Below, piece by piece: positions 813 to 39,164 of a stretch of DNA of 42,209 bases. The stretch comes from Octopus bimaculoides (taxonomy: Eukaryota), in assembly GCF_001194135.2 (NCBI RefSeq), contig NC_068982.1, forward strand, positions 38,487,764-38,529,972. Reading direction: 5' to 3'. The notes beneath the pieces are model-generated. The model saw only the letters and a list, made by a program, of their open reading frames with translations. It was not told the origin of the DNA and did not search any database. The position numbers and the translations under genes were made by a program. Every line of letters starts with the position of its first letter. Within the stretch, counting starts at the first letter, position 1.

Positions 813-968
813 NNNNNNNNNNNNNNNNNNNNNNNNNNNNNNNNNNNNNNNNNNNNNNNNNNNNNNNNNNNNNNNNNNNNNNNNNNNNNNNNNNNNNNNN
901 NNNNNNNNNNNNNNNNNNNNNNNNNNNNNNNNNNNNNNNNNNNNNNNNNNNNNNNNNNNNNNNNNNNN
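813..968. other. Assembly gap (156 N)
   Basis: Run of N. Confidence 1.
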
Positions 969-1016
969 AGCGCCTTCCACTTGGATTGCTTGGCACTTCA
1001 CCCACTATGTAACAAA

Positions 1017-15522: not shown

Positions 15523-16470
15523 ATGGATAACCTAACCATGGAAGAAGTGAACTCCGACAGCTCGTGTGACTTTGCACGTTGCTGGACTGTTGCCCTTCAA
15601 GTCACCTTATTGGGATTAATCTCAGCTGTGGGCACATTCAGCAACTCTTTAGTCATCCTGGCTATATTTTTGTTTGATGAACTTCGAACCAAAGCAAAGT
15701 CTTTTGTATGTAATTTAGCTGTCGCTGATCTGATTTTGTGCCTCTTCGTAATTCCTCTACGTACAATGATGATGTTTGCCAGACAACCTTTTGGCTTATG
15801 TCATGTAACGGTGGTAGCACAAGCCACATTCGTCTATACTTCAATAAATACACTAGCTGCCATTTCATATAATCGTTTTGTATTGACGATGAAGACACGG
15901 TCTCAGTACGAGAACACTTTTACTAAACGTAACGTGTTCCTCATTTTATCAACAGTTTGGTGTTTGGCTTTTGGTGCTTCCTTCATGGCTGTCATGTGGA
16001 CTGGAGCACTTAATGTCACCTATGACAACAAGACACGGGCATGTGTGTTTTTGAGAGGAAATGCAACAATTTCAGCCCTTCTGATGGTGCCACTATCATT
16101 ACTCTTTTCACCATTGTTATTAACTCTTTATTTCTATGCCCGTATTTTTTACTATGCTCGTCACTCCGCTGTGTCAGTAACTGGCCATCGCCCAGATGAC
16201 ATTAGTTTCACTTACAAATTGTGTTGCATCACCATTCTTTTCGGAATTTTAAACTTCCCAGCTTGCATTTTGGCTGTAGTACAGGTATTTAGTAGTCCGG
16301 ATGCAAATGAAGTTTTGATTCGTTTTTCCATCATCATCCAGCTACTTAATTCTGCTGTCAACCCAGTTATATATGGGTGGAAAGTGCCAAAATTTCGAAA
16401 TGCGTTTATTCGTATGTTACGCTTGAATACTTGTTTCAAAAGGGCCACAGTGCAGCCTATTAATCACTGA
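15523..16470 (+). CDS. Intronless class A (rhodopsin-like) GPCR, melatonin-receptor-like orphan, 315 aa
   Basis: Seven hydrophobic segments. TM1 SNSLV, TM2 NLAVADL, TM3 Cys and ISYNRF (DRY position), TM4 W, ECL2 YDNKTRAC, TM5 P...Y, TM6 LNFP, TM7 NSAVNPVIY, helix 8 PKFRNAF; N-glycosylation sequon NLT at residue 3. Confidence 0.95.
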   Translation: MDNLTMEEVNSDSSCDFARCWTVALQVTLLGLISAVGTFSNSLVILAIFLFDELRTKAKSFVCNLAVADLILCLFVIPLRTMMMFARQPFGLCHVTVVAQATFVYTSINTLAAISYNRFVLTMKTRSQYENTFTKRNVFLILSTVWCLAFGASFMAVMWTGALNVTYDNKTRACVFLRGNATISALLMVPLSLLFSPLLLTLYFYARIFYYARHSAVSVTGHRPDDISFTYKLCCITILFGILNFPACILAVVQVFSSPDANEVLIRFSIIIQLLNSAVNPVIYGWKVPKFRNAFIRMLRLNTCFKRATVQPINH

Positions 16471-19528: not shown

Positions 19529-21909
19529 TATATATATATATATATATATATATTTGTATTTTGAGTTAAAATAACTTTTGTGGCTTATAATTCTTTAATT
19601 TTTCAATAACTTTACAAATCATATTACATATCCCTTGTGTTTCCATATTTTGCTATGATCCTTGCCTTGCTAAAGGCCTCAGATCCCTTATCTCTCTCTC
19701 TATCTCTTGTATGTGGTGATGCTGATCATTGCTTGTTTGCAGTGCACCCACCCCCCATTCCCACCCCCACCACTAATACTGAAAATCTCTTATACCAGAA
19801 ACACTGACAGACTTGCATACCTCCATCCTACAATCCACCTACCTCTTTCTGTCTATACATAATGGACTAACCAATAACATCTCATTTACTTAAACATTGA
19901 CCTATTATATTTGCAGCAGAAACGCATAGATTTACGATGCTTATAACATTTATATTTACAATACTTACATTACACTCACACCCCACCTCCAACATGTTTC
20001 AATGATGGTAGGTTAAAACAAGAACAATTGATGTGACATGTCTGTTATCAAATGATCATGGAAACCTTTTTTGCAGTGCTGAAGAACATTAGTCCTTCCC
20101 ATGTTCCCTCCCACCTCCTTTTCCTAGTTTTCAGAGTCAGCACTGTCAATGTAGGCTCAAAGAAAGGTAGGTCTAGCGAGATTGTTGAGATGCTTGAATG
20201 GAGGCGTGTTGATGTATGTTGCATCCAAGAGGTAAGGTGGAGAGGAGCTTCAGCCAGGTTCCTCATAGGCAAGACACATAGGTATGAAATCTTCTGGGGA
20301 GGTAACAGTGACAGAGTAGGTATGTGGGCATACTTCTTGCAGAGAAATGGGTGGATAAGGTCATAGAGGTAGTCAGAGTGTGTGATAGAGTGATTAAGCT
20401 TAGGTTAGTCTTACAGAAAAGTATAGTGACAATTATCTCTGCCTATGCCCCACAAGCGGGCCTACAAAATGAACAGAAGGACAATTTTTATGATATTCTT
20501 CTGCAGGCTACCTCAAAGACAAATGACAATGATCTCCTCTTTGTGGCTGGGGATTTCAATGGGCATGTCAGACAGCAGCCTGGTAACATCTATGGAATGC
20601 ATGGGGGCCATGGAATTGGTTCCCGAAACGAAGAAGGAACAAGGCTACTGGAGTTCTGTGATATAAATAACCTTTTGATCTGCAACACTAACTTCAGAAA
20701 GGCAGCCAGCCACCTGATAACCTACCAATCAGGTGTCTGTGCTAGCTAGATCGATTACATTCTCACCAGACAACGGGATGCATGGTTGCTCCTAAATACA
20801 AAGACTGTCCCTGATGAAGAATGCACCCCCCAGCATAGACTAGTCATTAGTGACTTTAGACTCTACACCAGAAGGATACAAAGAAGTAAACCAATCTGGA
20901 AAAGAAGAATTTGGAAACTTAAGGACCCTTCATATGGTCAGAGATTTAGGGACATCTTAATTGAGAAATTTGATGAAATGGAGGAGGAGTTACAGATTTG
21001 TGACATAGAGAGCAACTGAGAATTCTTGAAGTACAGCTTGCTGAGTGCCACAGACCAAATTTGTGGATAATGCTAAGTCCCATCCAGACCTAGGGTAACG
21101 TGGTGGTGGTGGAACGATGTGGCAGACAGGGCTACTAGAGCAAAGAAACAGGCCTGGAAGGTCTGGAAGAATGGTGGTAGCAAGGAATTGTATCAGATTG
21201 CCAGAAGGGATGCTAGAAGACAAGTATATCTAGCCAAGGGTGAAGCAGTAAAGAAGAAGTTTGTCTATGTTCTGCAATGTGAGGACTAAAGAACTGAAAT
21301 GTTTCAGATTGCAAGACAGTGTATGAGAGAAAATCATGATGTCATAGGAGAGAAATGTGTCTGTATGGATGATGGTGCACTTGCATGTAATGATTCTGCA
21401 AAGAAAGGGGTTTGGAAATGCCATTATGAAAGACTGCTGAATGTAGAGAATGAATGGGAGGAGAAGAGTCTGCTAACTGTTGATCCAATTGAGGGACTGG
21501 CTACCTGAATCGACAGTTCCATGGTAGATGAAGTAGTTAAGGATATGAAGATTGGAAAAGCCCCCAGCCCATAAAGAATCACTGCTGAGATGCTTAAAAT
21601 ATCTGGCAGTGTAGGTTATGGTCTAGTCACCTGTATTGTAAATCAGGTGGTTCACGAAGGAGTCATACCCAATGACTGGTGTAGCAGCACCATAGTCAAC
21701 TACTACAAAGGTAAAGGTGATGCCTTAGATAGAAATAAGTACAGAGGTCTCAAATTGCTGGATCAGGTGATGAAAGTTATGGAGAGAGTCATAGCCCAAC
21801 TAATGAGGAAGAGTTATATTAGATGAGATGCAGTTTGGTTTTGTGCCAGGAAGTGGCATCACTGATGCTATATTTCTGGAACTAGAGAAGAAGTTCCAGG
21901 TATAGAATC

Positions 21910-22117
21910 CTTTCTACTATTGGCACAAGGCTGGAAATTTTTGGGGAGGGGGCCAGCCGATTAGATCGACCCCAGTATGCAACTGATACTTAATTTATCA
22001 ACCCCGAAAGAATGAAAGGCAAAGTCGACCTCAGCGGAATTTGAACTCAGAACGTAAGGACAGATGAAATATTGCTAAGCATTTCACCCAGTGTGTTAAC
22101 GATTCTGCCAGCTTGCC
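21910..22117 (-). mobile_element. SINE family B inserted in the RTE
   Basis: Reverse match to 14161..14390; flanked by TAGAATC at 21903..21909 and 22118..22124. Confidence 0.9.
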
Positions 22118-22388
22118 TAGAATCAAAGTACCTTTGAGTTACCCTAGCAAAAATCAAAGTCTTAGTAAGTAGGAAGACAGACAAATCACAAATCCCTTCA
22201 GGTAGTTGGCTCTGCCTGATCTGTAGGAAAAGTGTAGGTAGAAACTTCATAAGATGCACTCAATGTAAGCTTTGGACACACAAAAGCTGCAGCAATATCA
22301 GAGGAGGGTTAATAGGGAAACTAGCTTTTGTATGTGGAAGATGCACAGGTACAATAAATACTGTAGAAAATAAACTCCATCAACTGCC

Positions 22389-22415
22389 NNNNNNNNNNNN
22401 NGGGGGGGGGGGGGG
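22389..22415. other. 13-N gap followed by a 14-G run inside the RTE
   Basis: Direct reading. Confidence 0.95.
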
Positions 22416-23409
22416 AGCAGCTAGAGGTAGTAGATAACTTCCATTATCTAGGTGACTAAGTAGTGGAGGTGGATACTCCGAGAGCATAGCTGTGAGAATA
22501 AGATTAGGCTGGGCAAAGTTCAGAGAGCTCCTACCCCTGCTGGCAACAAAGGGCCTTTCTCTCAGAGTGAAAGGCAGATTATTTGAATGCCTGTGTGCGA
22601 ACAGCTATGCTGCATGGCAGTGAAACACGGGCTGTGACAGCCGAGGACATGCATAGGCTTGAAAGAAACGAAGCCAGTAAGCTTTGCTGGATGTGCAATG
22701 TCAGTGTGCATGTTCGACAGAGTGTAAGCATCTTGAGAGAAAAGTTAGGCATAAGAGGAATCAGATGTGGTGTCCAAGAGAGATGATTGTGTTGGTATGG
22801 TCATGTGATGCATATGGACAACGACAACTGTGTAAAGAAGTGCCAGTCTCTAACTGTGGAGGGAACCTGTGGAAGAGGTAAACCTAGGAAGACATGGGAC
22901 GAGGTGGTGAAGCATGATCTTCAAACTCTGAGCCTCACAGAGGCAGTGACTGGTGACCGAGACCTTTGGCAATGTACTGTGCTCAAGAGGACCCATCAAA
23001 CCTAGTGAAATCATAATCGTGGTAACAAGCACCCATGCTGGTGGTACATAAAGAACACCTTTTGAGCATTGGGCTTCATGGAGGCAAAGTGGCTGAGTTT
23101 CTATCGATTGTTTGGCCTCACGGAGGCAATGTCTAAGATCTTTGGCATTATGTCATGCTTGAGAAGAAGACCCATCAAGCCAAGCAAAATCACGGTTGTG
23201 ACAGATACTGGTGTCACATAAAAGCACACATTACACTCTCAGATTAGTTGGCGTTAGGAAGGGCATTCAGCCATAGAAAACCATGTCAAATCAGAGTGAA
23301 GTCTGGGGCAGCCTTCTAGTGTGTCAGCCGGGTCAATCCATCCAACTCATGGGTCAAACCATCCAAACCATACCATACTGGTATGGACAACAGATGTTAA
23401 ATGATGATG

Positions 23410-26044: not shown

Positions 26045-28369
26045 GTGTAACAAAAAGAATATGAGGAGAGAAAAGCAGATAGAAATAAACAAGGCAATAC
26101 ATTAAAATGTTTAAATTGTAAACTTTATTTATAAACAGTTGACCTATTAGATCACTGCACACTTTTCAGAGGCCAACCTTCTACAAGAAGGCACTCAGTG
26201 GAATTTCGTAGAGATTACAAATAAACTGTAGGGAGAAATGTAATTGTTTATTAAAGGGGCCAATTCATTGATTTATTTATTTATGAAATTCAATCACTTG
26301 ATGCCAAAACTTCATGTGTCAGGGGAAGATCAAGGATTCAACTGCTTAACATAATAACATGGAACTCTACCTCCAACCAAAGCTGATTCGGTAACAGCAG
26401 TAGTGGTGGAGGTGAGGGAGACGATGACAATAACAATGAAGATGATAGTGGAGATGGTGATGATGAATATGCAGATGAGAAAGATTATGATAACAATGTT
26501 TATATTTTTATTGTAATTAGTCATGTCGTCTTAGGAAGAGGCTTTGTTTCTTTGCATTCAGGCCTATCAAATTGGGCTAAACTGGATTATATAGTGCACA
26601 GTTGGACTATAGTGCACAACTGGACTATGGCACTCAGAAATATGCATTTCTGAAATAACCATAATTTCACAGATTTACAGTTGGGAGATAATTAGATTAT
26701 GCAACATTCATACCTTTCTCTAAAGGATTAGTAACATACAAGTAAAGTGAAATAGCTACAACTGGGGAACTAAAACTATATTGAAGGCTGAGCTCCCTGG
26801 GAGCAGGCTGATTCTAGTAAAAAGTGCTCAGAAATGTGATATTCTTGTACTACTCAATTGTGATATTTTTGTACTACTCTCAGTGGTTTTCAACCATCTC
26901 TTTTAATTAGCAAGTTTAATTTGGAGGGAAATATTATGCAGTAGCAGGGATTGCTTTTCAAAATTAAAATATTTGAGATGCTTCTGGAAAACATTTCAGC
27001 ACATGTAGCAGCTTGCCATATCATACCAGAATAGTGCAGCATCTGAATTGAAAACCACTGAATTAGTCAGCCAAATTCATCATTGAGGTTATTTCCCTCC
27101 TTTTTTAAATATTAAGTTGAGTTAATAACAATCTCTAAACTAGCTTCCACTTTCTATCCATAAACAATAAACAGAAAAACACATGGTAAACCATTACAAT
27201 AATTTCTGAAATTTATATCTTCTGTCTTTTGACAACAAAATGCATAATATAGTTTTCAGGGTTTTTAAAAGGGAAAATTCAAGGACCCAGAGAGCCAAGG
27301 AATGAGGCCATGACAATCTATCGGGCCCTGGAAAAAAAGAAAAAGAAAAGGAAACATAATCCCCTTGAATTCTGAGAGGATCCTACCTCTCAGGGCCTGA
27401 AAGCAGTCTTGTACTGCCTTGCCAAGTTTCTTTGGAGGCCCTGCCAATTTCAGTCTTTGGCTTCCTTATTAGTTATTAAAAATAAATAACTGAATGTCTA
27501 TCTGTCAAATGTACAAAAAAAAAAAAGGAAAAGAAAAAAGAAACAAATTAATAATAATAATAATAAAAAAAGTATAAAAACTATCAAAATTTACAATTTA
27601 GCTTTGCTGCCTCTGATTCCACATTGACACAGGAAATTATATTTTTTCATATTCTCCAAAAAATGAAATTACTTTATGAATGTATTATGTAATACACTTT
27701 TAATGGGAGAATTGTTCATACATGATGTATAATTGTTACAATTTTATTATTTTCATTCATTGATACATAAACTTAAATCTTTTAAGTTTGTGCTTCTTGA
27801 AAGATATCACAGGAGATAAAAATGTAAATAAATAAAATATTTGAGAGAATAAAATAAAATCATTATCATTCAAATTTTCACAATATTTATCTCATGCTTG
27901 CATAGATTGGATGGCTTCAGCTTAGATTTTCCTGGTTATGAGCCATGGAACTGTTTGAATTACTTAGTTTCACACATTCCTTGGTTCGTCTACCTATATA
28001 CTTACTATCACCAAACAACTATTTGTCACCCAATTAATCCACATTCTCAATTACTACCACATACATACATACTGCCCTGAGCTTCTGTTTTTACAATCAA
28101 CAAGTATTTCCCAGTTACTTTTGAAACTGGATTTTGCGCATGTTTTCAGTTTGACATTGCATATCTAACAGATTTTTACCTATTTATATTTTTATTTATT
28201 ATATATAAGGCATTTTATGAATATTAGCAACATAAATTATTGGTTTCCAATGGGCAGTTGCTGCATCACTGTTGTTCTGATGGTGAGAGCATCAAAGAAG
28301 TATCTGTACAGCTTGAGCAGAATTTTAGCGCATATTATCAGCAGCTTATTTTTGGCCAATATGCGTTTT

Positions 28370-29176: not shown

Positions 29177-29828
29177 NNNNNNNNNNNNNNNNNNNNNNNN
29201 NNNNNNNNNNNNNNNNNNNNNNNNNNNNNNNNNNNNNNNNNNNNNNNNNNNNNNNNNNNNNNNNNNNNNNNNNNNNNNNNNNNNNNNNNNNNNNNNNNNN
29301 NNNNNNNNNNNNNNNNNNNNNNNNNNNNNNNNNNNNNNNNNNNNNNNNNNNNNNNNNNNNNNNNNNNNNNNNNNNNNNNNNNNNNNNNNNNNNNNNNNNN
29401 NNNNNNNNNNNNNNNNNNNNNNNNNNNNNNNNNNNNNNNNNNNNNNNNNNNNNNNNNNNNNNNNNNNNNNNNNNNNNNNNNNNNNNNNNNNNNNNNNNNN
29501 NNNNNNNNNNNNNNNNNNNNNNNNNNNNNNNNNNNNNNNNNNNNNNNNNNNNNNNNNNNNNNNNNNNNNNNNNNNNNNNNNNNNNNNNNNNNNNNNNNNN
29601 NNNNNNNNNNNNNNNNNNNNNNNNNNNNNNNNNNNNNNNNNNNNNNNNNNNNNNNNNNNNNNNNNNNNNNNNNNNNNNNNNNNNNNNNNNNNNNNNNNNN
29701 NNNNNNNNNNNNNNNNNNNNNNNNNNNNNNNNNNNNNNNNNNNNNNNNNNNNNNNNNNNNNNNNNNNNNNNNNNNNNNNNNNNNNNNNNNNNNNNNNNNN
29801 NNNNNNNNNNNNNNNNNNNNNNNNNNNN
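29177..29828. other. Assembly gap (652 N) within (TA)n
   Basis: Run of N. Confidence 1.
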
Positions 29829-30060
29829 TATATATATATATATATATATACATGCATGCATATAGGTATACATATATCTATGTAAACATATACATATATA
29901 CCTACACACACACACATATATATGCATATATGCCTGTATGTATACTTATATACATACATATGTACATACATATATATATGCACGCACATACACATATACA
30001 CACACATACATACATACATATACACAAACACACACATATAAATAAATACATACATATATC

Positions 30061-31299: not shown

Positions 31300-31745
31300 A
31301 TATGTGTGTGTGTGTGCTTCTGTGTGTGTGCTTCTGTGTGTGCATATATACATACATAAATATATATATGTATGTATATATGCACATACAGATTTATATA
31401 TATAAACATATGTACACATTCAAATATATATATGTACATCCATATATATATATATGTATGTGCATATAAGCATGTTTACATACATATATATACATATTTA
31501 CACACATATATTTACCGTAACTTTATGCACACACACACACACACAACATACAAATGAACTTATCTGCATGTGTGTGTGTGTGTGTGCACGAATGTATCTA
31601 TATATATGTGTATGTACACACACACATACACATGCACACACACATGTATATATACACATAGATATATATGCACATTCATATATGCACATGTACACACATA
31701 CACCACATTCACAAATACAGATATACATATCTGTGTAAATGCATG
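31300..31745. repeat. Long imperfect (TA/CA/TG)n microsatellite tract
   Basis: Direct reading. Confidence 0.9.
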
Positions 31746-32039
31746 TTTCTAAGTATTAAAACTTCAAGTCCAAAACACTAACATTCTACAAAAATTTCAC
31801 TCCAAAATTCTAGCACTACATAGTAAACTACTAATCTGAAGGAAGAAAGCTTGATAATTTTCTTTGAAAATGCATAATTTTGTTCAAATCCAAATAAATA
31901 ATTCTCGTTTATTCACTCAAGTAATTTTTAATCTACCTACCAACAAATATAAACAAAATATAAATCCCAAATTTTACTATTTTTCATTATATTATCATGA
32001 AAATTATCACACCAGCTTTTCTTTAGTAAATGTAACTCT

Positions 32040-32078
<39 letters not shown>

Positions 32079-32444
32079 ATAAGCATCTCAAAAGTAAATA
32101 GACTCCTCTCATTGTACTGTTTTACCTGTGTGGACACTGTTCATTAATATGATGCCCAAATAAGTTAAATCGTTAAAAACTGCACAAGCCATGACTACTA
32201 ATTACTAGATCAATTATTTAAATGCATCAAATGACATTTTGTTTCTAGAAATATTTCTTTCAATAAAATTTAAAAAAAAAAAAAATTATGGTGTCTATTT
32301 ACTTTTGAGATACCTGTGAGTGTGTGAGTGTGTGTGTGTGTGTATATATAGATAGATAGACACATATATATAGATAGATAGATAGACACACACACATACA
32401 CATACAGACATACATATATGCAAATTTGTATATCAAAGCTTTCA

Positions 32445-33824
32445 TCAGGAGGCTAGATTTGCTCTCTCTGTTTCTCGTAGCTTGTAATCAATCTCACTAT
32501 ATAGTTCTTGAGATATTTCACCTGTCAAAAGTTTATACAGAAATGTAGATTTGCTTTTTTTCATATGGTTTAATTTTGATGAGGCATCGCTCAAATAAGA
32601 CAAACCAGTACTGTCTTTACCCATTGGGATAATTCCGCGTAAATATTTCTCTAATTCAGAGACATTCTCTCTTTTAGGAGAATTTCCATTGTTGGAAGCA
32701 TTCTTTTTCGAATTGGAAATGTGTAGCTGTTTATCACTTTGTTTATGTTTTAAATTCTGCATATAGCTGAAATATCGGCTATCAGGTTTGTTTGGGAATG
32801 CACCTGGTTGCAAATTTCTTGGCTGATGTTGTGGAAAATTGAAAGAAGAAGGTGACAAAGCACATGACAAATGACCTGTTAGAACTTTTTGCAGACAGCT
32901 TGTCTTTGAAATAACATTTGGGGATTTAGGTATTGCAAACACGTCCTTCTTTTTAAAGGTTTTTGAACTTTTGGTTTGATTATAGTTGAATGAATTATCA
33001 ATGCCGTAAGATGAGTCAGATGGAGACAACAAATGCATTTGAGCAGAGGAACAATTATCCCCTTGCTTCTCACTAAAATATCCATGGAGATTTGCATGAA
33101 CTGAATTACATTTTGCTGCATATTTCCCTAAATTAGGCTCGCTACAAAATTTATTTTCACATTCTTGAAAGCAGTTATTTAGCTTTTGACATTTTGAGTG
33201 ATATGACGGTAAACTGGAAGATATAGCAGTGGAAAGGGAGGAATTTGGAAACAAATAAGTTGGTTCAGGATTCTTCTGATTATCAGAAAATACAGAAACT
33301 GGATCATCTTTGTCATTAAAGTAATTTGATTCAATTAGTTCAGACTGATTACCAAATAATGGCTGATCAAATGCGTGATCAAAAGCCTGATCAAATGCAT
33401 TGTTTATTTCACCTAGTGATAACTGATTATCAGTGGCATCTGAAATGTTTCGGGAAGAGAAGGCAATGTCATCAAAAACAGGTTTTAATTTGTTCTCAAA
33501 TACACTGGGATTTTCATGGTATACAGAGGTGCAAATAGATGTGTTTGGATCACCTGAAAAGAAGTCATCATTGATGAGATCAGATTTGAAGAAGTTATCA
33601 ACATCAAATGAAGCAATCTCTTCACTTGAGGGTGTTTCTGACTGAAAATAACTCATCATATCATTCTGTACATCTTCGGAATTGTACATTATTTGACTTA
33701 TCAAAGTTTCAAATTGGGAATTGTCTTCAAAATCAAAATCATTCATAGAACCTTCACTGAATGCAGAGTCTGGTGATGAGACTGCAGAAAGATTTTTATC
33801 AAGAGGAGATGTCATTGTAAACAT
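32445..33824 (-). CDS. Uncharacterised 459-aa protein, acidic/Ser-rich, likely disordered, with C-terminal LxxLL-like motifs
   Basis: 1380-nt uninterrupted ORF in AT-rich DNA, not repeat-derived by any motif I recognise. In-frame TGA upstream (33890-33888) supports the ATG at 33824; strong splice acceptor 117 nt upstream. Confidence 0.88.
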   Translation of the reverse strand: MFTMTSPLDKNLSAVSSPDSAFSEGSMNDFDFEDNSQFETLISQIMYNSEDVQNDMMSYFQSETPSSEEIASFDVDNFFKSDLINDDFFSGDPNTSICTSVYHENPSVFENKLKPVFDDIAFSSRNISDATDNQLSLGEINNAFDQAFDHAFDQPLFGNQSELIESNYFNDKDDPVSVFSDNQKNPEPTYLFPNSSLSTAISSSLPSYHSKCQKLNNCFQECENKFCSEPNLGKYAAKCNSVHANLHGYFSEKQGDNCSSAQMHLLSPSDSSYGIDNSFNYNQTKSSKTFKKKDVFAIPKSPNVISKTSCLQKVLTGHLSCALSPSSFNFPQHQPRNLQPGAFPNKPDSRYFSYMQNLKHKQSDKQLHISNSKKNASNNGNSPKRENVSELEKYLRGIIPMGKDSTGLSYLSDASSKLNHMKKSKSTFLYKLLTGEISQELYSEIDYKLRETERANLAS

Positions 33825-33941
33825 TAGGAAAGAACGATAAGCTTTTTTTCTATGCTGTATTTGTTTCCTATTTGAAATACTGAATAGTCAAGGGAGAGCT
33901 TCCATTGAAGAAATGCAACATGTAAAAATTGATTACGGCAT

Positions 33942-33970
33942 CTGAAATAGATACAAGGGAATAGAATTAA
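33942..33970 (-). promoter_or_regulatory. Candidate 3' splice acceptor of the coding exon
   Basis: Minus strand ttaattctattcccttgtatctatttcag|atgccg; exon would begin at 33941. Confidence 0.6.
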
Positions 33971-36170
33971 CATTATGAATATGATAATGCTACAAAGATA
34001 AAAATAGTGCAAAGTATAAATACATATTGCTTTCTGCTTTTAATTCATAATTTCATTTAAATTTATTAGTGATGCTTTTGTGCTTTACAAAAATTAGGAT
34101 CAGTTATTCATTTTGTTGGATACACAAACCACATTGTTCAAGGTGAAGGTGAAAACAAATACACACACACACACCCACAATCTCATAACAACCAATTCAT
34201 GTTACCAAACAATTTCAAGTTGAAGAACCTTGCAAGTGTGAAATGGTAAATTAAAAATCATTGGACATTGCTGAATGGAAGAGTATAACATGGAACCTTT
34301 ATTACTGCAGGTCTGAAATCACCATATCTGGTTCATGAATCTCAGAGATGTAAAACAATAAAAAAGAAGAAAAAAAAGGAACAAAACTCATGGGTGAAAA
34401 CAATAGTCAACAAACATCTAAAGACCATCAACATTCTGTCACTTAAATTCATCCTGTTTTGATTGTATTTGTTACTGGTAACACACACACACAAAATAGC
34501 AAAAACACATGTGGAAACGGGTTACACAATAGAAATATTATGCGGTTCAATCCACTCCACTTCATGTAACCACAGATTTCCTGAATCTTATTTAAGGCAC
34601 TGGAGAAACACTTTCCTCTTATAGATATAGAAAAAAAAATCTTTAATAGACATACAGTAGAATGTGCATACTCCGCCACACCAAATCCATCCAACAATGT
34701 AGCAGCAATTAACAATAAAAAGTTAAATAGTAATAGTAATAAGGAACGTGCCTTTACTTATATAGGTAAATATTATATTGTGAATGTTATATCTTAAGCT
34801 ATTAAGATAATACTATGACAATTGTGTCTCTTTCTAATAGTAGTAATAATATAGATACAATAAATACTGACTTTTCTCATAATATTCCAAATAGCATGTG
34901 TAACTTTAGGGATCCAAATAAGTGCCTTTTAAATAACCAGTGTTTTAAAACTAATGTAGTATATAAATGTTCATTTATGACTCCAGGTGAATTACAGTGC
35001 TATATAAGTGCTATTGTAATCAAATTTAAGTTCAGATAGCATAATCATATACATTCCATTAAGAGTGAAACAAAAGCACTTACCATTTCACAAGCTAAAT
35101 TTCTTAGAGACCTCAAAATGAGGATTATTAGTAAATCAGTAGTGTATTGCACTTCCATACAAAGGGTTATGTTATGGGTAGCTGTAACATGTGTGCTATG
35201 GAGATGACTAATTTGTTTCAGAAATACAGACAGACAGAGAGAAGAATCACCTTGTTACAAGACTGGTATTTTATTTATCAACCCTAAAAAATAGATGTAA
35301 ACCAAAGCTCATTTTGATGGTACTTCAATGAAGAGTTCAGAGAACTAGAGCAGCTACCACAAGGCAATTTATCTGGAGCTTTATAAATTTGGCCAATTTG
35401 CTGCCTTATGATTGTACATGTAAAAAATCTACACTGTATATGTAAAAAAGTGTGATGTGTATTGAAATACAGGTGGTGAATGCAGAACATTTTTAAATGA
35501 TTGGTGAGGAAAAAGTTGTGAATATATCCATCTGATGGATGTTCGAGGTTTATTTTGGAGTAACGTTTAACACAAATAAATGGAGAATGCAGCTGGGAAG
35601 AGATGCATTGTCAAATGTCTACACAGAATGCAACAATATTAATTTGAGCATGACTGATATATTATGTTTTAAAAAATGAATCACAGATAAAATGTGCATG
35701 ATACCTAATTAGAAACAAAGAAAATCCTGCAGGGAAGTTATTAGGGCATATCAAAGAAGATTAGATCTCACAAATTAAATCATATAGATGGCGATCAATG
35801 AAACTTATAGGATGATGAAATACAGACATTTAAACAATGGTATCAATAAATGCATTAAAGTTTACTGGTAGTCTATTATTTGCTTCTGTATATTATTTAA
35901 TTTTTATTTCTATTTTTATGAAAGCTGAGGATGATGAAACAGTGATAACAGATGTCCAGCAGGATTGTAATCCATACAGCTGAATGAAGTCACAAATGCT
36001 AATAACTAATAAACCATGTCATATAAATTCAAGTTACTCATAAAACATGTGAGCTTTCAATGAATTGGTTTTATGAAATTAAATTAATGTAAGATACCCT
36101 AGCCTCTCACATGTGACCCCTTGTATATTTTGTAGATATTCATAACAGCCATGTCAACTGAGCCAATATA

Positions 36171-37406
36171 TTAGGTTGTTTCACATGAAATGTTGTATTT
36201 GAAAGGTAACAATAAAATGTTTCAGGTGTTGAGAACTGATTAATTTAATCAAAGTATGATCCATGTGCATTTATGATGTTTACCCAACGTTTCTCTATGA
36301 CATATATTCCATCTTTAAAAAAAATTCATCTTTTGCTGTGATAAACTGTCCGAATGCTTTAATTACCTCTTCTCTATTTAAGAAGGTTTTATCGCTTATG
36401 AAAAGCTCAAAATGCTTAAATAAGTGATAATCAGGAGGAGAGATATCAGGGGAATAGGAAGGATGTTGCAAAATCTCATAATTCAGGCCTTGCAACTTTT
36501 GGACCATAGCTTGAGGAGTGTGAGGATGTGCATTGTTGTGGAGCAAAATTGGGCCATCTCTATTCACTAGTCTGGGTTGCTTCTTTTTCAAATTCTCATG
36601 CATACAATCAATTTCCTGGCAATATGATGTTGCTGTTACTGTTTTTCCTTGTTGCAAAAATGAATAACTCCCATCACAGACCACCATACAGTGACCACTA
36701 ACTTTTTAGGGTGCAATGGTGGGTTTGGGTAGTGTTTCGGTGACTTTGCTGCATCTAATCACTGTCCTGTTCTCCTGCTGTCAAAGAGTATCCATTTCTC
36801 ATCACAAGTAATGATCTGATGCAAAAATGGTCTTTTTTCAGTCAAGAAAGCAATAAAGAGCACACTTCGAGGTGTCTGTTTTTTTAATCTCATTCAGTTG
36901 ATGTGGAACAAACCTATCCATTTTCTTGACTTTTCCAATTTTTTACATGTGTCCAAAAACAGTTGAGCGAAATGTTTGGAGTTCTCATGAAAGTTTTTGA
37001 ACCTTTGTTCTTGAATTTTGCTCAACCAAAGCATTTAATCCATCATGCTGAATAACTAATTTTGGCCTACCCCTTGGTTTATTTTCAAGGCTATCATCTC
37101 CTGAACAAGAACTCTGGAACCATCTCTGAATAGTTCTGATGTCAACAAAACCATTACCAGAGGTCTTCTTCATATTCCATAGAGCTTCTGTGGCAGAGTG
37201 ACCCAGTTTGTACTCATACGAGAAAATCACTCAACATAGTTTGGTTGTTATCATTTTCCTAAGGTCTGTGGGTACAAATTTTGTATACCAATATTATTGG
37301 GAAAGAAAAAGAGTCAAGATTAAATGCAAAGTATACATAATTGAGTTTTTAAATGACTGAAATAACAAGTAATTAAAAATGCAACATTTCATGTGAAACA
37401 ACCTTA
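36171..37406 (-). mobile_element. Mariner (DD34D) transposon, full length, degenerate
   Basis: ~30-bp near-perfect TIRs ttaggttgtttcacatgaaatgttgtattt / taaggttgtttcacatgaaatgttgcattt, TA at 36169-36170. Transposase ORFs 36985..37230 (YEYKLGHSA...ENKPRGRP) and 36295..36687 (HNNAHPHT, HPSYSPDISPPDYHLF). Confidence 0.95.
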
Positions 37407-38944: not shown

Positions 38945-38956
38945 CATACATACATA

Positions 38957-39164
38957 NNNNNNNNNNNNNNNNNNNNNNNNNNNNNNNNNNNNNNNNNNNN
39001 NNNNNNNNNNNNNNNNNNNNNNNNNNNNNNNNNNNNNNNNNNNNNNNNNNNNNNNNNNNNNNNNNNNNNNNNNNNNNNNNNNNNNNNNNNNNNNNNNNNN
39101 NNNNNNNNNNNNNNNNNNNNNNNNNNNNNNNNNNNNNNNNNNNNNNNNNNNNNNNNNNNNNNNN
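38957..39164. other. Assembly gap (208 N) within (TA/TACA)n
   Basis: Run of N. Confidence 1.

What the first reader, a model, noticed from the sequence alone, without database searches (positions are those of the whole stretch)
32445..33824. Orphan 459-aa protein built like a stand-alone nuclear-receptor coregulator
Seen: D/E/F-rich N-terminal ~180 aa, a Ser/Asn linker, a basic patch KSSKTFKKK, and three copies of L-x-K-(V/Y/L)-L-(T/R)-G: CLQKVLTG (32874..32894), ELEKYLRG (32634..32654) and FLYKLLTG (32520..32540, canonical LxxLL). No DNA-binding or enzymatic domain is recognisable. Established: acidic-aromatic tracts act as activation domains, and LxxLL boxes bind nuclear-receptor AF-2 (SRC, PGC-1, RIP140/NRIP1, DAX-1); NRIP1 is also a single-coding-exon gene. 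Inference: an uncharacterised molluscan transcriptional coregulator. This is the best candidate for new biology in the window.
Basis: partly seen in the sequence, partly recalled or inferred. Interest (0 to 1): 0.72.

Follow-up and report, generated by a model that had tools for sequence, protein, structure and literature searches.

The report
Cephalopod-only disordered coregulator-like protein
This is a real, strongly conserved octopus gene from a small family so far found only in cephalopods, encoding a mostly unstructured protein strung with short docking motifs of the kind that transcription coactivators use to bind nuclear hormone receptors, although no binding has been tested.

Summary
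Window 32445..33824 (-) is an intact 459-aa ORF in Octopus bimaculoides. It has an acidic/aromatic N-terminus, a Ser/Asn linker, a basic patch and three copies of L-x-K-Φ-L-[T/R]-G.

It is a genuine gene. dN/dS is 0.08-0.09. The orthologue is a spliced mRNA in a cuttlefish-like decapodiform, with a 5'UTR intron and one coding exon. The stop codon position is conserved.

It is not one exon of a larger known protein and has no Pfam domain. AlphaFold predicts disorder, with short helices exactly on the conserved blocks.

An exhaustive profile search of 1.84 billion proteins found only five representatives. Every member with a known source is a cephalopod. They form two paralogues, and all three boxes are kept in both.

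Three motifs are new here:
- An invariant S-x-x-S-x-x-S-x-x-S / DSAFSE motif that nearly matches the Wee1 β-TrCP degron.
- An HCF-1-type [DE]HNY motif in relatives, lost in the octopod copy.
- Class III flanks on the LxxLL box.

The motif set mimics PGC-1α (LKKLL, LLKYL, DHDY, acidic N-terminus). Even so, profile comparison shows no homology, the motif order differs and there is no RS/RRM region.

The third, receptor binding, remains untested.

The parts
32445..33824 (-). Complete CDS (459 aa plus stop) of paralogue A of a cephalopod-restricted family; single coding exon
   Evidence: ORF. Exact protein recorded on O. bimaculoides chromosome CM046602.1. dN/dS 0.084-0.091 against a sister octopus and Argonauta. 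Orthologues.
33747..33776 (-). Invariant phospho-motif, aa 17-26, S-P-D-S-A-F-S-E-G-S (S-x-x-S-x-x-S-x-x-S; core DSAFSE); putative β-TrCP-type phosphodegron or CK1-type cascade
   Evidence: S17, D19, S20, A21, F22, S23, E24 and S26 are invariant in all 8 aligned sequences of both paralogues. The Wee1 degron TGEDSAFQEP is listed in PMC10317156. The function is inferred.
33564..33725 (-). Conserved acidic-aromatic helical module, aa 34-87 (LETLISQ..., SSEEIASFDVDNFF...); activation-domain-like
   Evidence: AF2 helices 34-62 and 67-87. 39-aa tiles with net charge <=-9 and >=7 W/F/Y/L occur here in every member checked. 0 nonsynonymous against 21 synonymous changes in codons 1-95, O. bimaculoides vs Argonauta.
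32973..33284 (-). Poorly conserved Ser/Asn-rich disordered linker, aa 181-284
   Evidence: 30% S+N. pLDDT about 30. Length varies between lineages.
32946..32972 (-). Basic patch KSSKTFKKK, aa 285-293; a similar FKKK lies upstream of box 1 in Sepia paralogue B (seen by eye, not aligned); possible weak NLS (inferred)
32874..32897 (-). Box 1, CLQKVLTG (LxxVL, Ser at -2, Thr at +6)
   Evidence: AF2 helix 307-316. Kept as LRKVL, LREAL or LYQVL at the equivalent position in all members.
32625..32663 (-). Box 2, VSELEKYLRGIIP (LxxYL), the most invariant C-terminal element
   Evidence: E-L-E-K-Y-L-R-G invariant in all members with a C-terminus. AF2 helix 390-396. Core LEKYL compares with PGC-1α L3 LLKYL.
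32451..32549 (-). Box 3 (TFLYKLLTG, canonical LxxLL with class III flanks) plus the conserved terminal amphipathic helix (EISQELYSEIDYKLRETERANL)
   Evidence: L, K, L, L, T, G, E ... Y, E, I, D invariant. AF2 helices 428-434 and 439-458, pLDDT 83-89 in the C-terminal model. Class III definition.
33868..33943 (-). Candidate 3' splice acceptors (tttcag, ttcag, aaatag) just upstream of the ATG; probable end of a 5'UTR intron
   Evidence: Sequence. By analogy with the proven acceptor in the decapodiform orthologue. Not shown for octopus.
31592..32444 (-). Probable 3'UTR, conserved with Argonauta; AATAAA/ATTAAA at 31932 and 31913
   Evidence: Colinear 74-85% identity to Argonauta beyond the stop codon. 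No open frames. The cuttlefish-like mRNA has about 2 kb of 3'UTR.

Best explanation
Shown: this is an intact, expressed-type, single-coding-exon gene of Octopus bimaculoides under strong purifying selection. It belongs to a small two-paralogue family detectable only in cephalopods. The protein is predicted to be intrinsically disordered. Its conserved parts are short helix-forming linear motifs separated by fast-evolving Ser/Asn-rich linkers.

Inferred mechanism: a regulated nuclear adaptor or transcriptional coregulator.
- The three [S/T]-x-L-x-K-Φ-L-[T/R]-G helices dock onto LxxLL-binding grooves. The most likely target is the AF-2 surface of nuclear receptors. Box 3 is a class III NR box, the type preferred by NR5A receptors. 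Box 2 (LEKYL) resembles the ERR-selective L3 of PGC-1α.
- The acidic-aromatic N-terminal helices would recruit the transcription machinery.
- The invariant S17-x-x-S20-x-x-S23-x-x-S26 / DSAFSE element would act as a phosphorylation-dependent switch. Most likely it is a β-TrCP-type degron like Wee1's DSAFQE, controlling protein level.
- The priming site differs between paralogues: Ser-Pro in paralogue A and R-x-R-x-x-S in paralogue B.
- Relatives also carry an HCF-1-type [DE]HNY motif, which the octopod copy has lost.

Rough probabilities: real constrained gene 0.97; disordered motif-based adaptor 0.8; transcriptional coregulator 0.45; direct nuclear-receptor binding 0.3.
For: Gene reality:
- dN/dS is 0.084-0.091 in four pairs. 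The first 95 codons show 0 nonsynonymous against 21 synonymous changes.
- The locus is syntenic and colinear with Argonauta.
- The decapodiform orthologue is a spliced mRNA. Its colinearity with genomic DNA starts at a T13CTTTTCAG acceptor.
- Paralogue B was assembled from Sepia esculenta hatchling RNA-seq.

Disorder plus motifs:
- Mean pLDDT is 42, with helices only at the conserved blocks.
- The C-terminal 81 aa do not form a compact domain (pTM 0.34).

Motif conservation across about 43%-identical orthologues and across paralogues is shown.

Composition is activation-domain-like in all members.

Motif precedents:
- PGC-1α L2 LKKLL, L3 LLKYL (primary ERR site), HCF-1 motif DHDY and an N-terminal activation domain.
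- Class III NR box = Ser at -2 and Thr at +6, preferred by SF-1/LRH-1.
- Wee1 β-TrCP degron DSAFQE.
Against: - No experiment or complex model links the boxes to any receptor.
- Only box 3 is a canonical LxxLL. One LxxLL per 459 aa is not unusual by chance (P=0.17).
- Box-3-like strings occur in unrelated proteins. TEM β-lactamase has LRKLLTGEL.
- No convincing conserved classical NLS was found.
- Box 3 is fused to a conserved 20-residue helix with an invariant Y-x-E-I-D. A plain NR box does not need this, so the partner may be something else.
- No octopus expression data were found. The four short 95%-identical contigs are genomic, not transcripts.
- All degron, HCF-1 and NR-box readings rest on short motifs with low information content.
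Confidence: 0.4

Rival explanations
1. It is a motif-based adaptor, but not for nuclear receptors. The three amphipathic boxes, and especially the composite box 3 plus terminal helix, bind another helix-accepting domain. Candidates are CBP/p300 KIX/TAZ/NCBD, Sin3 PAH, a Mediator subunit or a cytoplasmic scaffold. The protein would then be a phospho-regulated signalling or cell-cycle adaptor, or a substrate.
For: - Box 3 is always followed, at fixed spacing, by a conserved helix with invariant Y..EID. This suggests a larger interface than an NR box.
- Boxes 1 and 2 are non-canonical (LxxVL, LxxYL).
- The strongest conservation lies in the phospho-motif, not in the boxes.
- LxxLL-like strings are common and promiscuous.
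Against: - All boxes share the NR-box-like frame [S/T](-2)-x-L-x-x-Φ-L. Box 3 has exact class III flanks in all 8 members.
- The co-occurrence with an acidic-aromatic N-terminus and an HCF-1-type motif points to transcription.
- No PDB chain of a p160 CBP-interaction domain or similar matched the module profile at E<=10.
Confidence: 0.33
2. The hydrophobic boxes are nuclear export (or other trafficking) signals. The protein is a nucleo-cytoplasmic shuttling factor, and the phospho-motif controls its location.
For: - Box 2 in paralogue A fits NES class 1c (LEKYLRGIIPM).
- The conserved N-terminal helix in paralogue B fits classes 1a/1d (LESLIDQLIF).
Against: - Neither NES match is conserved across both paralogues. 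Box 2 ends in Thr in paralogue B, and the N-terminal helix of paralogue A ends in Tyr.
- Boxes 1 and 3 fit no NES class in the octopus protein.
- Three export signals in one protein would be unusual.
Confidence: 0.1
3. It is a highly diverged true homologue of the PGC-1 family, an NT-PGC-1-like truncated copy, possibly a retrogene since it has a single coding exon.
For: It has look-alikes of four PGC-1α features: an acidic N-terminal activation domain, LKKLL (identical in P0006/P0007), LLKYL-like LEKYL with an identical S-E-L-x-K-Y-L frame, and a [DE]HxY HCF-1 motif.
Against: - Family profiles score PGC-1α no better than shuffles. The full-length profile gives -7.8 bits with 1431 of 2000 shuffles at least as high. 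The module profile gives 1.3 bits with 100 of 2000 at least as high.
- The motif order is different: HBM first, then L3-like before L2-like.
- There is no RS region or RRM.
- The exhaustive profile search found no PGC-1 protein.
Confidence: 0.05
4. It is a spurious or decaying ORF (chance open frame, transposon remnant or pseudogene) in a repeat-rich region.
For: - The surroundings are rich in microsatellites and transposon fragments.
- The O. sinensis paralogue B locus is split into four ORFs in different frames.
Against: - dN/dS is about 0.09 over 1.4 kb.
- The frame is intact in three octopods and two decapodiforms.
- It is a single-copy syntenic locus, and the orthologue is a spliced mRNA.
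Confidence: 0.02

Closest known systems
PGC-1α / PPARGC1A (N-terminal half, as in the NT-PGC-1α isoform)
   Same: Both have a disordered acidic N-terminal activation region followed by several leucine-rich helices. LKKLL (L2) is identical in two family members. LLKYL (L3, the ERR-selective site) compares with the invariant LEKYL, within an identical S-E-L-x-K-Y-L frame. Relatives carry an HCF-1-type [DE]HxY motif.
   Different: No sequence homology is detectable. The motif order is not colinear. There is no RS domain, RRM or CBP80-binding motif. The octopus copy lacks the HCF-1 motif. The whole CDS sits in one exon.
RIP140 / NRIP1
   Same: Box 1 (LQKVLTGH) resembles the LLQLLLGH-type boxes I recall from NRIP1. 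That recollection is a lead only.
   Different: This protein has 3 boxes rather than 9-10. No CtBP-binding PxDL[ST] motif occurs in any member. No homology was detected. The acidic N-terminus suggests activation rather than repression.
Class III NR-box cofactors of NR5A receptors (SF-1/LRH-1/NHR-25 partners, e.g. C. elegans LIR-2; Drosophila Ftz-FTZ-F1 from memory)
   Same: Box 3 has Ser/Thr at -2, a hydrophobic residue at -1, LxxLL and Thr at +6 in every member. This is the class III signature.
   Different: The class is defined on mammalian peptides. No binding data exist here. These cofactors are unrelated in sequence to this family.
β-TrCP substrates with Gly-less degrons (Wee1 DSAFQE)
   Same: D-S-A-F-x-E is identical at five of six positions and invariant across the family. 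Upstream and downstream serines sit at 3-residue spacing.
   Different: Only a 6-10 residue motif is shared. The kinases involved, and β-TrCP binding itself, are untested.

Membership tests
PGC-1 family (PPARGC1A/B, PPRC1, Spargel) | C-terminal RS-rich region and RRM | tested here: not met
   No Pfam RRM or any other domain at E<=10. The CDS ends 23 residues after box 3's LLTGE in all members.
PGC-1 family (PPARGC1A/B, PPRC1, Spargel) | Detectable sequence homology of the N-terminal activation/NR-interaction region | tested here: not met
   Profile against PGC-1α scores no better than shuffles (the PGC-1α sequence is from memory). No PGC-1 protein among the hits of the exhaustive profile search.
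PGC-1 family (PPARGC1A/B, PPRC1, Spargel) | L2 LxxLL, L3 LLKYL and HCF-1 motif DHDY in the order AD-L2-L3-HBM | tested here: inconclusive
   Look-alikes of each motif exist. Their order is HBM-AD-box1-L3-like-L2-like, and the octopus protein lacks the HBM.
RIP140 / NRIP1 | CtBP-binding PxDL[ST] motifs and 9-10 LxxLL boxes | tested here: not met
   No P.DL[ST] in any of 8 members. One to three LxxLL per protein.
p160 / SRC (NCOA1-3) | N-terminal bHLH-PAS domains and a CBP-interaction domain | tested here: not met
   No Pfam hits. No NCOA chain among PDB matches at E<=10.
Functional class: NR-box (LxxLL) nuclear-receptor coregulators | Exposed amphipathic LxxLL helix with class-defining flanks | tested here: met
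   Box 3 is [S/T]-Φ-L-x-x-L-L-T in all members. It is helical in an otherwise disordered chain and not buried in a compact domain. Class III definition.
Functional class: NR-box (LxxLL) nuclear-receptor coregulators | Ligand- or AF-2-dependent binding to a nuclear-receptor LBD and an effect on transcription | not testable with these tools
No experimental data were found.
SCF-β-TrCP substrates | D-pS-G/A-Φ-x-pS/E degron | tested here: met
   DSAFSE is invariant. It matches the Wee1 DSAFQE degron listed. This is a sequence-level match only.
SCF-β-TrCP substrates | Phosphorylation-dependent β-TrCP binding and degradation | not testable with these tools
   Needs biochemistry.
HCF-1-binding proteins | [D/E]-H-x-Y motif | tested here: not met
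   Absent from the octopus protein and from 8.4 kb upstream in the window. Present as EHNY or DHNY in decapodiform paralogue A and in paralogue B of Sepia and O. sinensis.

The most novel reading that the evidence does not exclude
Cephalopods evolved their own family of PGC-1-like nuclear-receptor coactivators, with no detectable homology to any coregulator family. It was assembled convergently from the same short motifs: an acidic activation helix, an LKKLL-type box, an LxKYL ERR-type box and an HCF-1 motif. A Wee1-type β-TrCP phosphodegron, with paralogue-specific priming sites, puts it under kinase control. That would make it a lineage-specific layer of nuclear-receptor or metabolic gene regulation in animals noted for regulatory innovation.
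Probability: 0.25. Interest if true: 0.65.

Novelty: new variant of a known kind. Interest (0 to 1): 0.45.

Why it matters
Cephalopod genomes hold many lineage-restricted genes of unknown function. Few come with so coherent and testable a motif architecture under such strong constraint.

If the boxes do bind nuclear receptors, this would be a clear case of convergent assembly of a coactivator from short linear motifs. It would also give a handle on ERR, NR5A or other receptor signalling in cephalopods, where cofactors are essentially uncharacterised.

If they bind something else, the invariant DSAFSE phospho-motif and the composite box 3 helix still define a new regulated adaptor family.

The case also shows the limit of motif-based annotation. 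The PGC-1α look-alikes are striking to the eye but statistically indistinguishable from chance at the profile level.

Tried and rejected
- Pfam and PDB sequence searches on the protein and its relatives gave nothing significant. The best PDB look-alikes are chance matches: TEM β-lactamase LRKLLTGEL, and a 'Matrix Protein' AELEGYLRGVNPM at E about 1.
- I first took P0006-P0008 for non-cephalopod mollusc orthologues. I rejected this. P0009 is an Octopus sinensis paralogue and P0008 comes from Sepia esculenta RNA-seq.
- I hoped L004-L007 were octopus transcripts. They are colinear with the genome through the 5' flank and end in microsatellites, so they are genomic contigs.
- PGC-1 homology is rejected by the shuffle-controlled profile scores.
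- An upstream exon encoding the decapodiform N-terminal extension or HBM was not found in the window.
- A folded C-terminal domain burying boxes 2 and 3 is not supported (pTM 0.34). I did not run fold search because both models are too low in confidence to give meaningful matches.
- From memory, the element resembles the p160 CBP-interaction domain (LLDQL...LEEIDRAL against FLYKLL...YREIDRKL). No NCOA chain appeared in the PDB profile search, so I dropped it as a lead.
- NES patterns are not conserved across the paralogues.
- Rfam found nothing in 25-35 kb.
- The third word-indexed homology search, with trimmed modules, returned only two family members and nothing new.
- Literature searches for the locus names, and for cephalopod NR coactivators, gave nothing specific.

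Full report
OBSERVATION. The window is a eukaryotic assembly: AT-rich, full of microsatellites, with N gaps. The exact protein is recorded on Octopus bimaculoides chromosome CM046602.1 in GCA_001194135.2. The ORF at 32445..33824 (-) encodes 459 aa.
- Aa 1-180 are 31% D/E/F with net charge -29.
- Aa 181-290 are 30% Ser+Asn.
- KSSKTFKKK is at aa 285-293.
- CLQKVLTG, ELEKYLRG and FLYKLLTG are at aa 310, 390 and 428.

No shuffle out of 200,000 gave two or more copies of the 7-residue pattern, although the pattern was defined post hoc. One LxxLL alone is not unusual (P=0.17). Pfam gives no family at E<=10, and PDB gives nothing significant.

IS IT A GENE, AND IS IT COMPLETE?
- Orthologues exist in a sister octopus (97%), Argonauta hians (88%) and two decapodiforms (43%, 610 and 633 aa). 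There is also a partial Acanthosepion pharaonis model.
- dN/dS is 0.084-0.091 in four comparisons. In the first 95 codons O. bimaculoides and Argonauta differ by 21 synonymous and 0 nonsynonymous changes.
- The locus is syntenic with Argonauta, with colinear conserved non-coding blocks for about 6 kb downstream.
- A 4.5-kb Logan contig encoding the 633-aa orthologue is colinear with the genomic locus of the other decapodiform only from its nucleotide 333. At that point the genome has T13CTTTTCAG. The contig is therefore a spliced mRNA with a non-coding 5' exon, the whole CDS in one exon, and about 2 kb of 3'UTR.
- In the window, candidate acceptors lie 44-118 nt upstream of the ATG.
- All homologues stop at the same position. 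The ORF is thus a complete CDS, not an exon of a larger protein.
- The four 95%-identical short contigs are genomic, not transcripts. Direct expression evidence for the octopus copy is therefore lacking.

FAMILY.
- An exhaustive HMMER profile search of 1.84 billion representatives found only five proteins at E<=0.001.
- The 'distant' hits (863-1009 aa) are a second paralogue. One N-terminal fragment is Octopus sinensis LOC118761188. Its locus carries all the modules but is broken into four ORFs in different frames.
- The 1009-aa form comes from RNA-seq of Sepia esculenta hatchlings.
- Every member with a known source is a cephalopod. The source of P0006/P0007 is unknown.

ANATOMY. AlphaFold2 gives mean pLDDT 42. 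Helices fall only at aa 34-62, 67-87, 137-151, 307-316 (box 1), 390-396 (box 2), 428-434 (box 3) and 439-458. The C-terminal 81 aa modelled alone give pTM 0.34: three helices and no compact domain. So the boxes are exposed, partner-inducible helices rather than a buried core. The elements conserved across both paralogues are:
(i) S17-x-x-S20-x-x-S23-x-x-S26 with the invariant core D-S-A-F-S-E. It is preceded by Ser-Pro in paralogue A and by R-x-R-T-N-S in paralogue B.
(ii) An acidic-aromatic module (LE-x-LI-x-Q ... SFD-x-D-x-F) with net charge <=-9 and >=7 W/F/Y/L per 39 aa in all members.
(iii) A basic patch.
(iv) Box 1: [S/C]-x-L-x-x-[V/A]-L-[T/A].
(v) Box 2: ELEKYLRG, invariant.
(vi) Box 3: [S/T]-Φ-L-x-[K/R]-L-L-T-G-E, followed at fixed spacing by Y-x-E/K-I-D in a long helix.
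(vii) A [D/E]HNY motif near the N-terminus of decapodiform paralogue A and of paralogue B. It is absent from the octopod paralogue A and from the 8.4 kb upstream of it in the window.

MECHANISM (inferred).
- The DSAFSE core matches the validated Wee1 β-TrCP degron DSAFQE at five of six positions, including the Glu that replaces the second phosphoserine.
- The 3-residue serine spacing is what a CK1-type sequential phosphorylation would use. That point is from general knowledge.
- NR boxes are classified by their flanks. Class III has Ser at -2 and Thr at +6 and is preferred by NR5A receptors. Box 3 fits this in every member. Box 1 has the same flanks with Val or Ala at +4.
- PGC-1α has an N-terminal activation domain, L2 LKKLL, L3 LLKYL (the primary ERR site) and the HCF-1 motif DHDY. 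The family has LLKKLL or LYKLL, SELEKYL (against SELLKYL) and [DE]HNY.
- Together these point to a phospho-regulated nuclear adaptor that bridges LxxLL-binding proteins, most plausibly nuclear receptors, to the transcription machinery.

IS IT A PGC-1? No. Family profiles score human PGC-1α no better than shuffled versions. The full-length profile gives -7.8 bits, with 1431 of 2000 shuffles at least as high. The module profile gives 1.3 bits, with 100 of 2000 at least as high. HMMER does pair the expected motifs, each at about 0 bits. The motif order is not colinear, and the RS/RRM region is absent. The RIP140-defining CtBP motifs are also absent. The resemblance is functional and motif-level, hence probably convergent.

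CAUTIONS.
- Short motifs recur by chance. TEM β-lactamase carries LRKLLTGEL.
- The conserved helix fused to box 3 suggests an interface larger than a plain NR box.
- No conserved classical NLS was found.
- NES-like patterns occur in box 2 of paralogue A and in the N-terminal helix of paralogue B, but they are not conserved across paralogues.
- No receptor-binding, localisation or activation data exist, and complex prediction could not be run with these tools.

VERDICT. The third test, receptor binding, is open. The thing is a new, cephalopod-restricted family of disordered, motif-built proteins. It most resembles LxxLL coactivators of the PGC-1 type without being homologous to them. Interest is moderate: a well-defined, experimentally tractable candidate, but with a function that is still only predicted.

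Noticed in passing
window 15523..16470 (+): An intact 315-aa single-exon ORF encoding a rhodopsin-family GPCR (Pfam 7tm_1, E=1.3e-33; weaker Srsx chemoreceptor hit). It lies about 16 kb downstream of the gene, on the opposite strand.
   Followed up: partly
window 20324..20749 (+) and the GC-richer stretch 20000..23000: An endonuclease/reverse-transcriptase fragment (Exo_endo_phos_2, E=2.4e-4, below the Pfam cutoff) in a region of 43-45% GC and strong positive GC skew. It is probably a non-LTR retrotransposon remnant.
   Followed up: partly
window 36295..36687 (-): A mariner/Tc1-type transposase fragment (Pfam Transposase_1, partial DDE domain, 27.1 bits) about 2.5 kb upstream of the gene.
   Followed up: partly
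window 26083..26252, 26633..26859, 27549..27937: AT-rich blocks with stops in all frames, 75-87% identical to and colinear with Argonauta hians. One is more conserved than the CDS itself. They are candidate conserved regulatory elements or a very long 3'UTR. Rfam found no match.
   Followed up: partly
L011 10001..12464 (Octopus sinensis VCDQ01004062.1): The paralogue B locus carries every conserved module, but split into four ORFs in different frames. The annotated 227-aa 'isoform X1' (LOC118761188) looks like a model forced around frameshifts. The cause is either assembly indels or pseudogenisation in octopods.
   Followed up: partly
L002 11831..11833: P0003 ends in an extra 'W' because the metagenome gene caller read the TGA stop as Trp. 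The contig is a decapodiform host contig inside an ENA 'metagenome' assembly.
   Followed up: yes
P0003 aa 365 and P0004 aa 383 (aligned to window ~33130..33150): Decapodiform paralogue A has a second [DE]HxY match (EHSY). It aligns to EPNL in the octopus protein, so the octopod copy has lost both HCF-1-type motifs.
   Followed up: partly
window ~830..1000, ~29180..29830, ~38950..39150: Assembly gaps (runs of N) flanked by (TATG/CA)n-type microsatellites. Similar microsatellites bracket the gene at ~32300..32440 and ~34160..34180, and they terminate the short-read contigs of the sister species.
   Followed up: no
window 32625..32663 (box 2): PDB chain 9q47_B ('Matrix Protein') begins with AELEGYLRGVNPM, resembling SELEKYLRGIIPM. 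E is about 1, so I treated it as chance.
   Followed up: no
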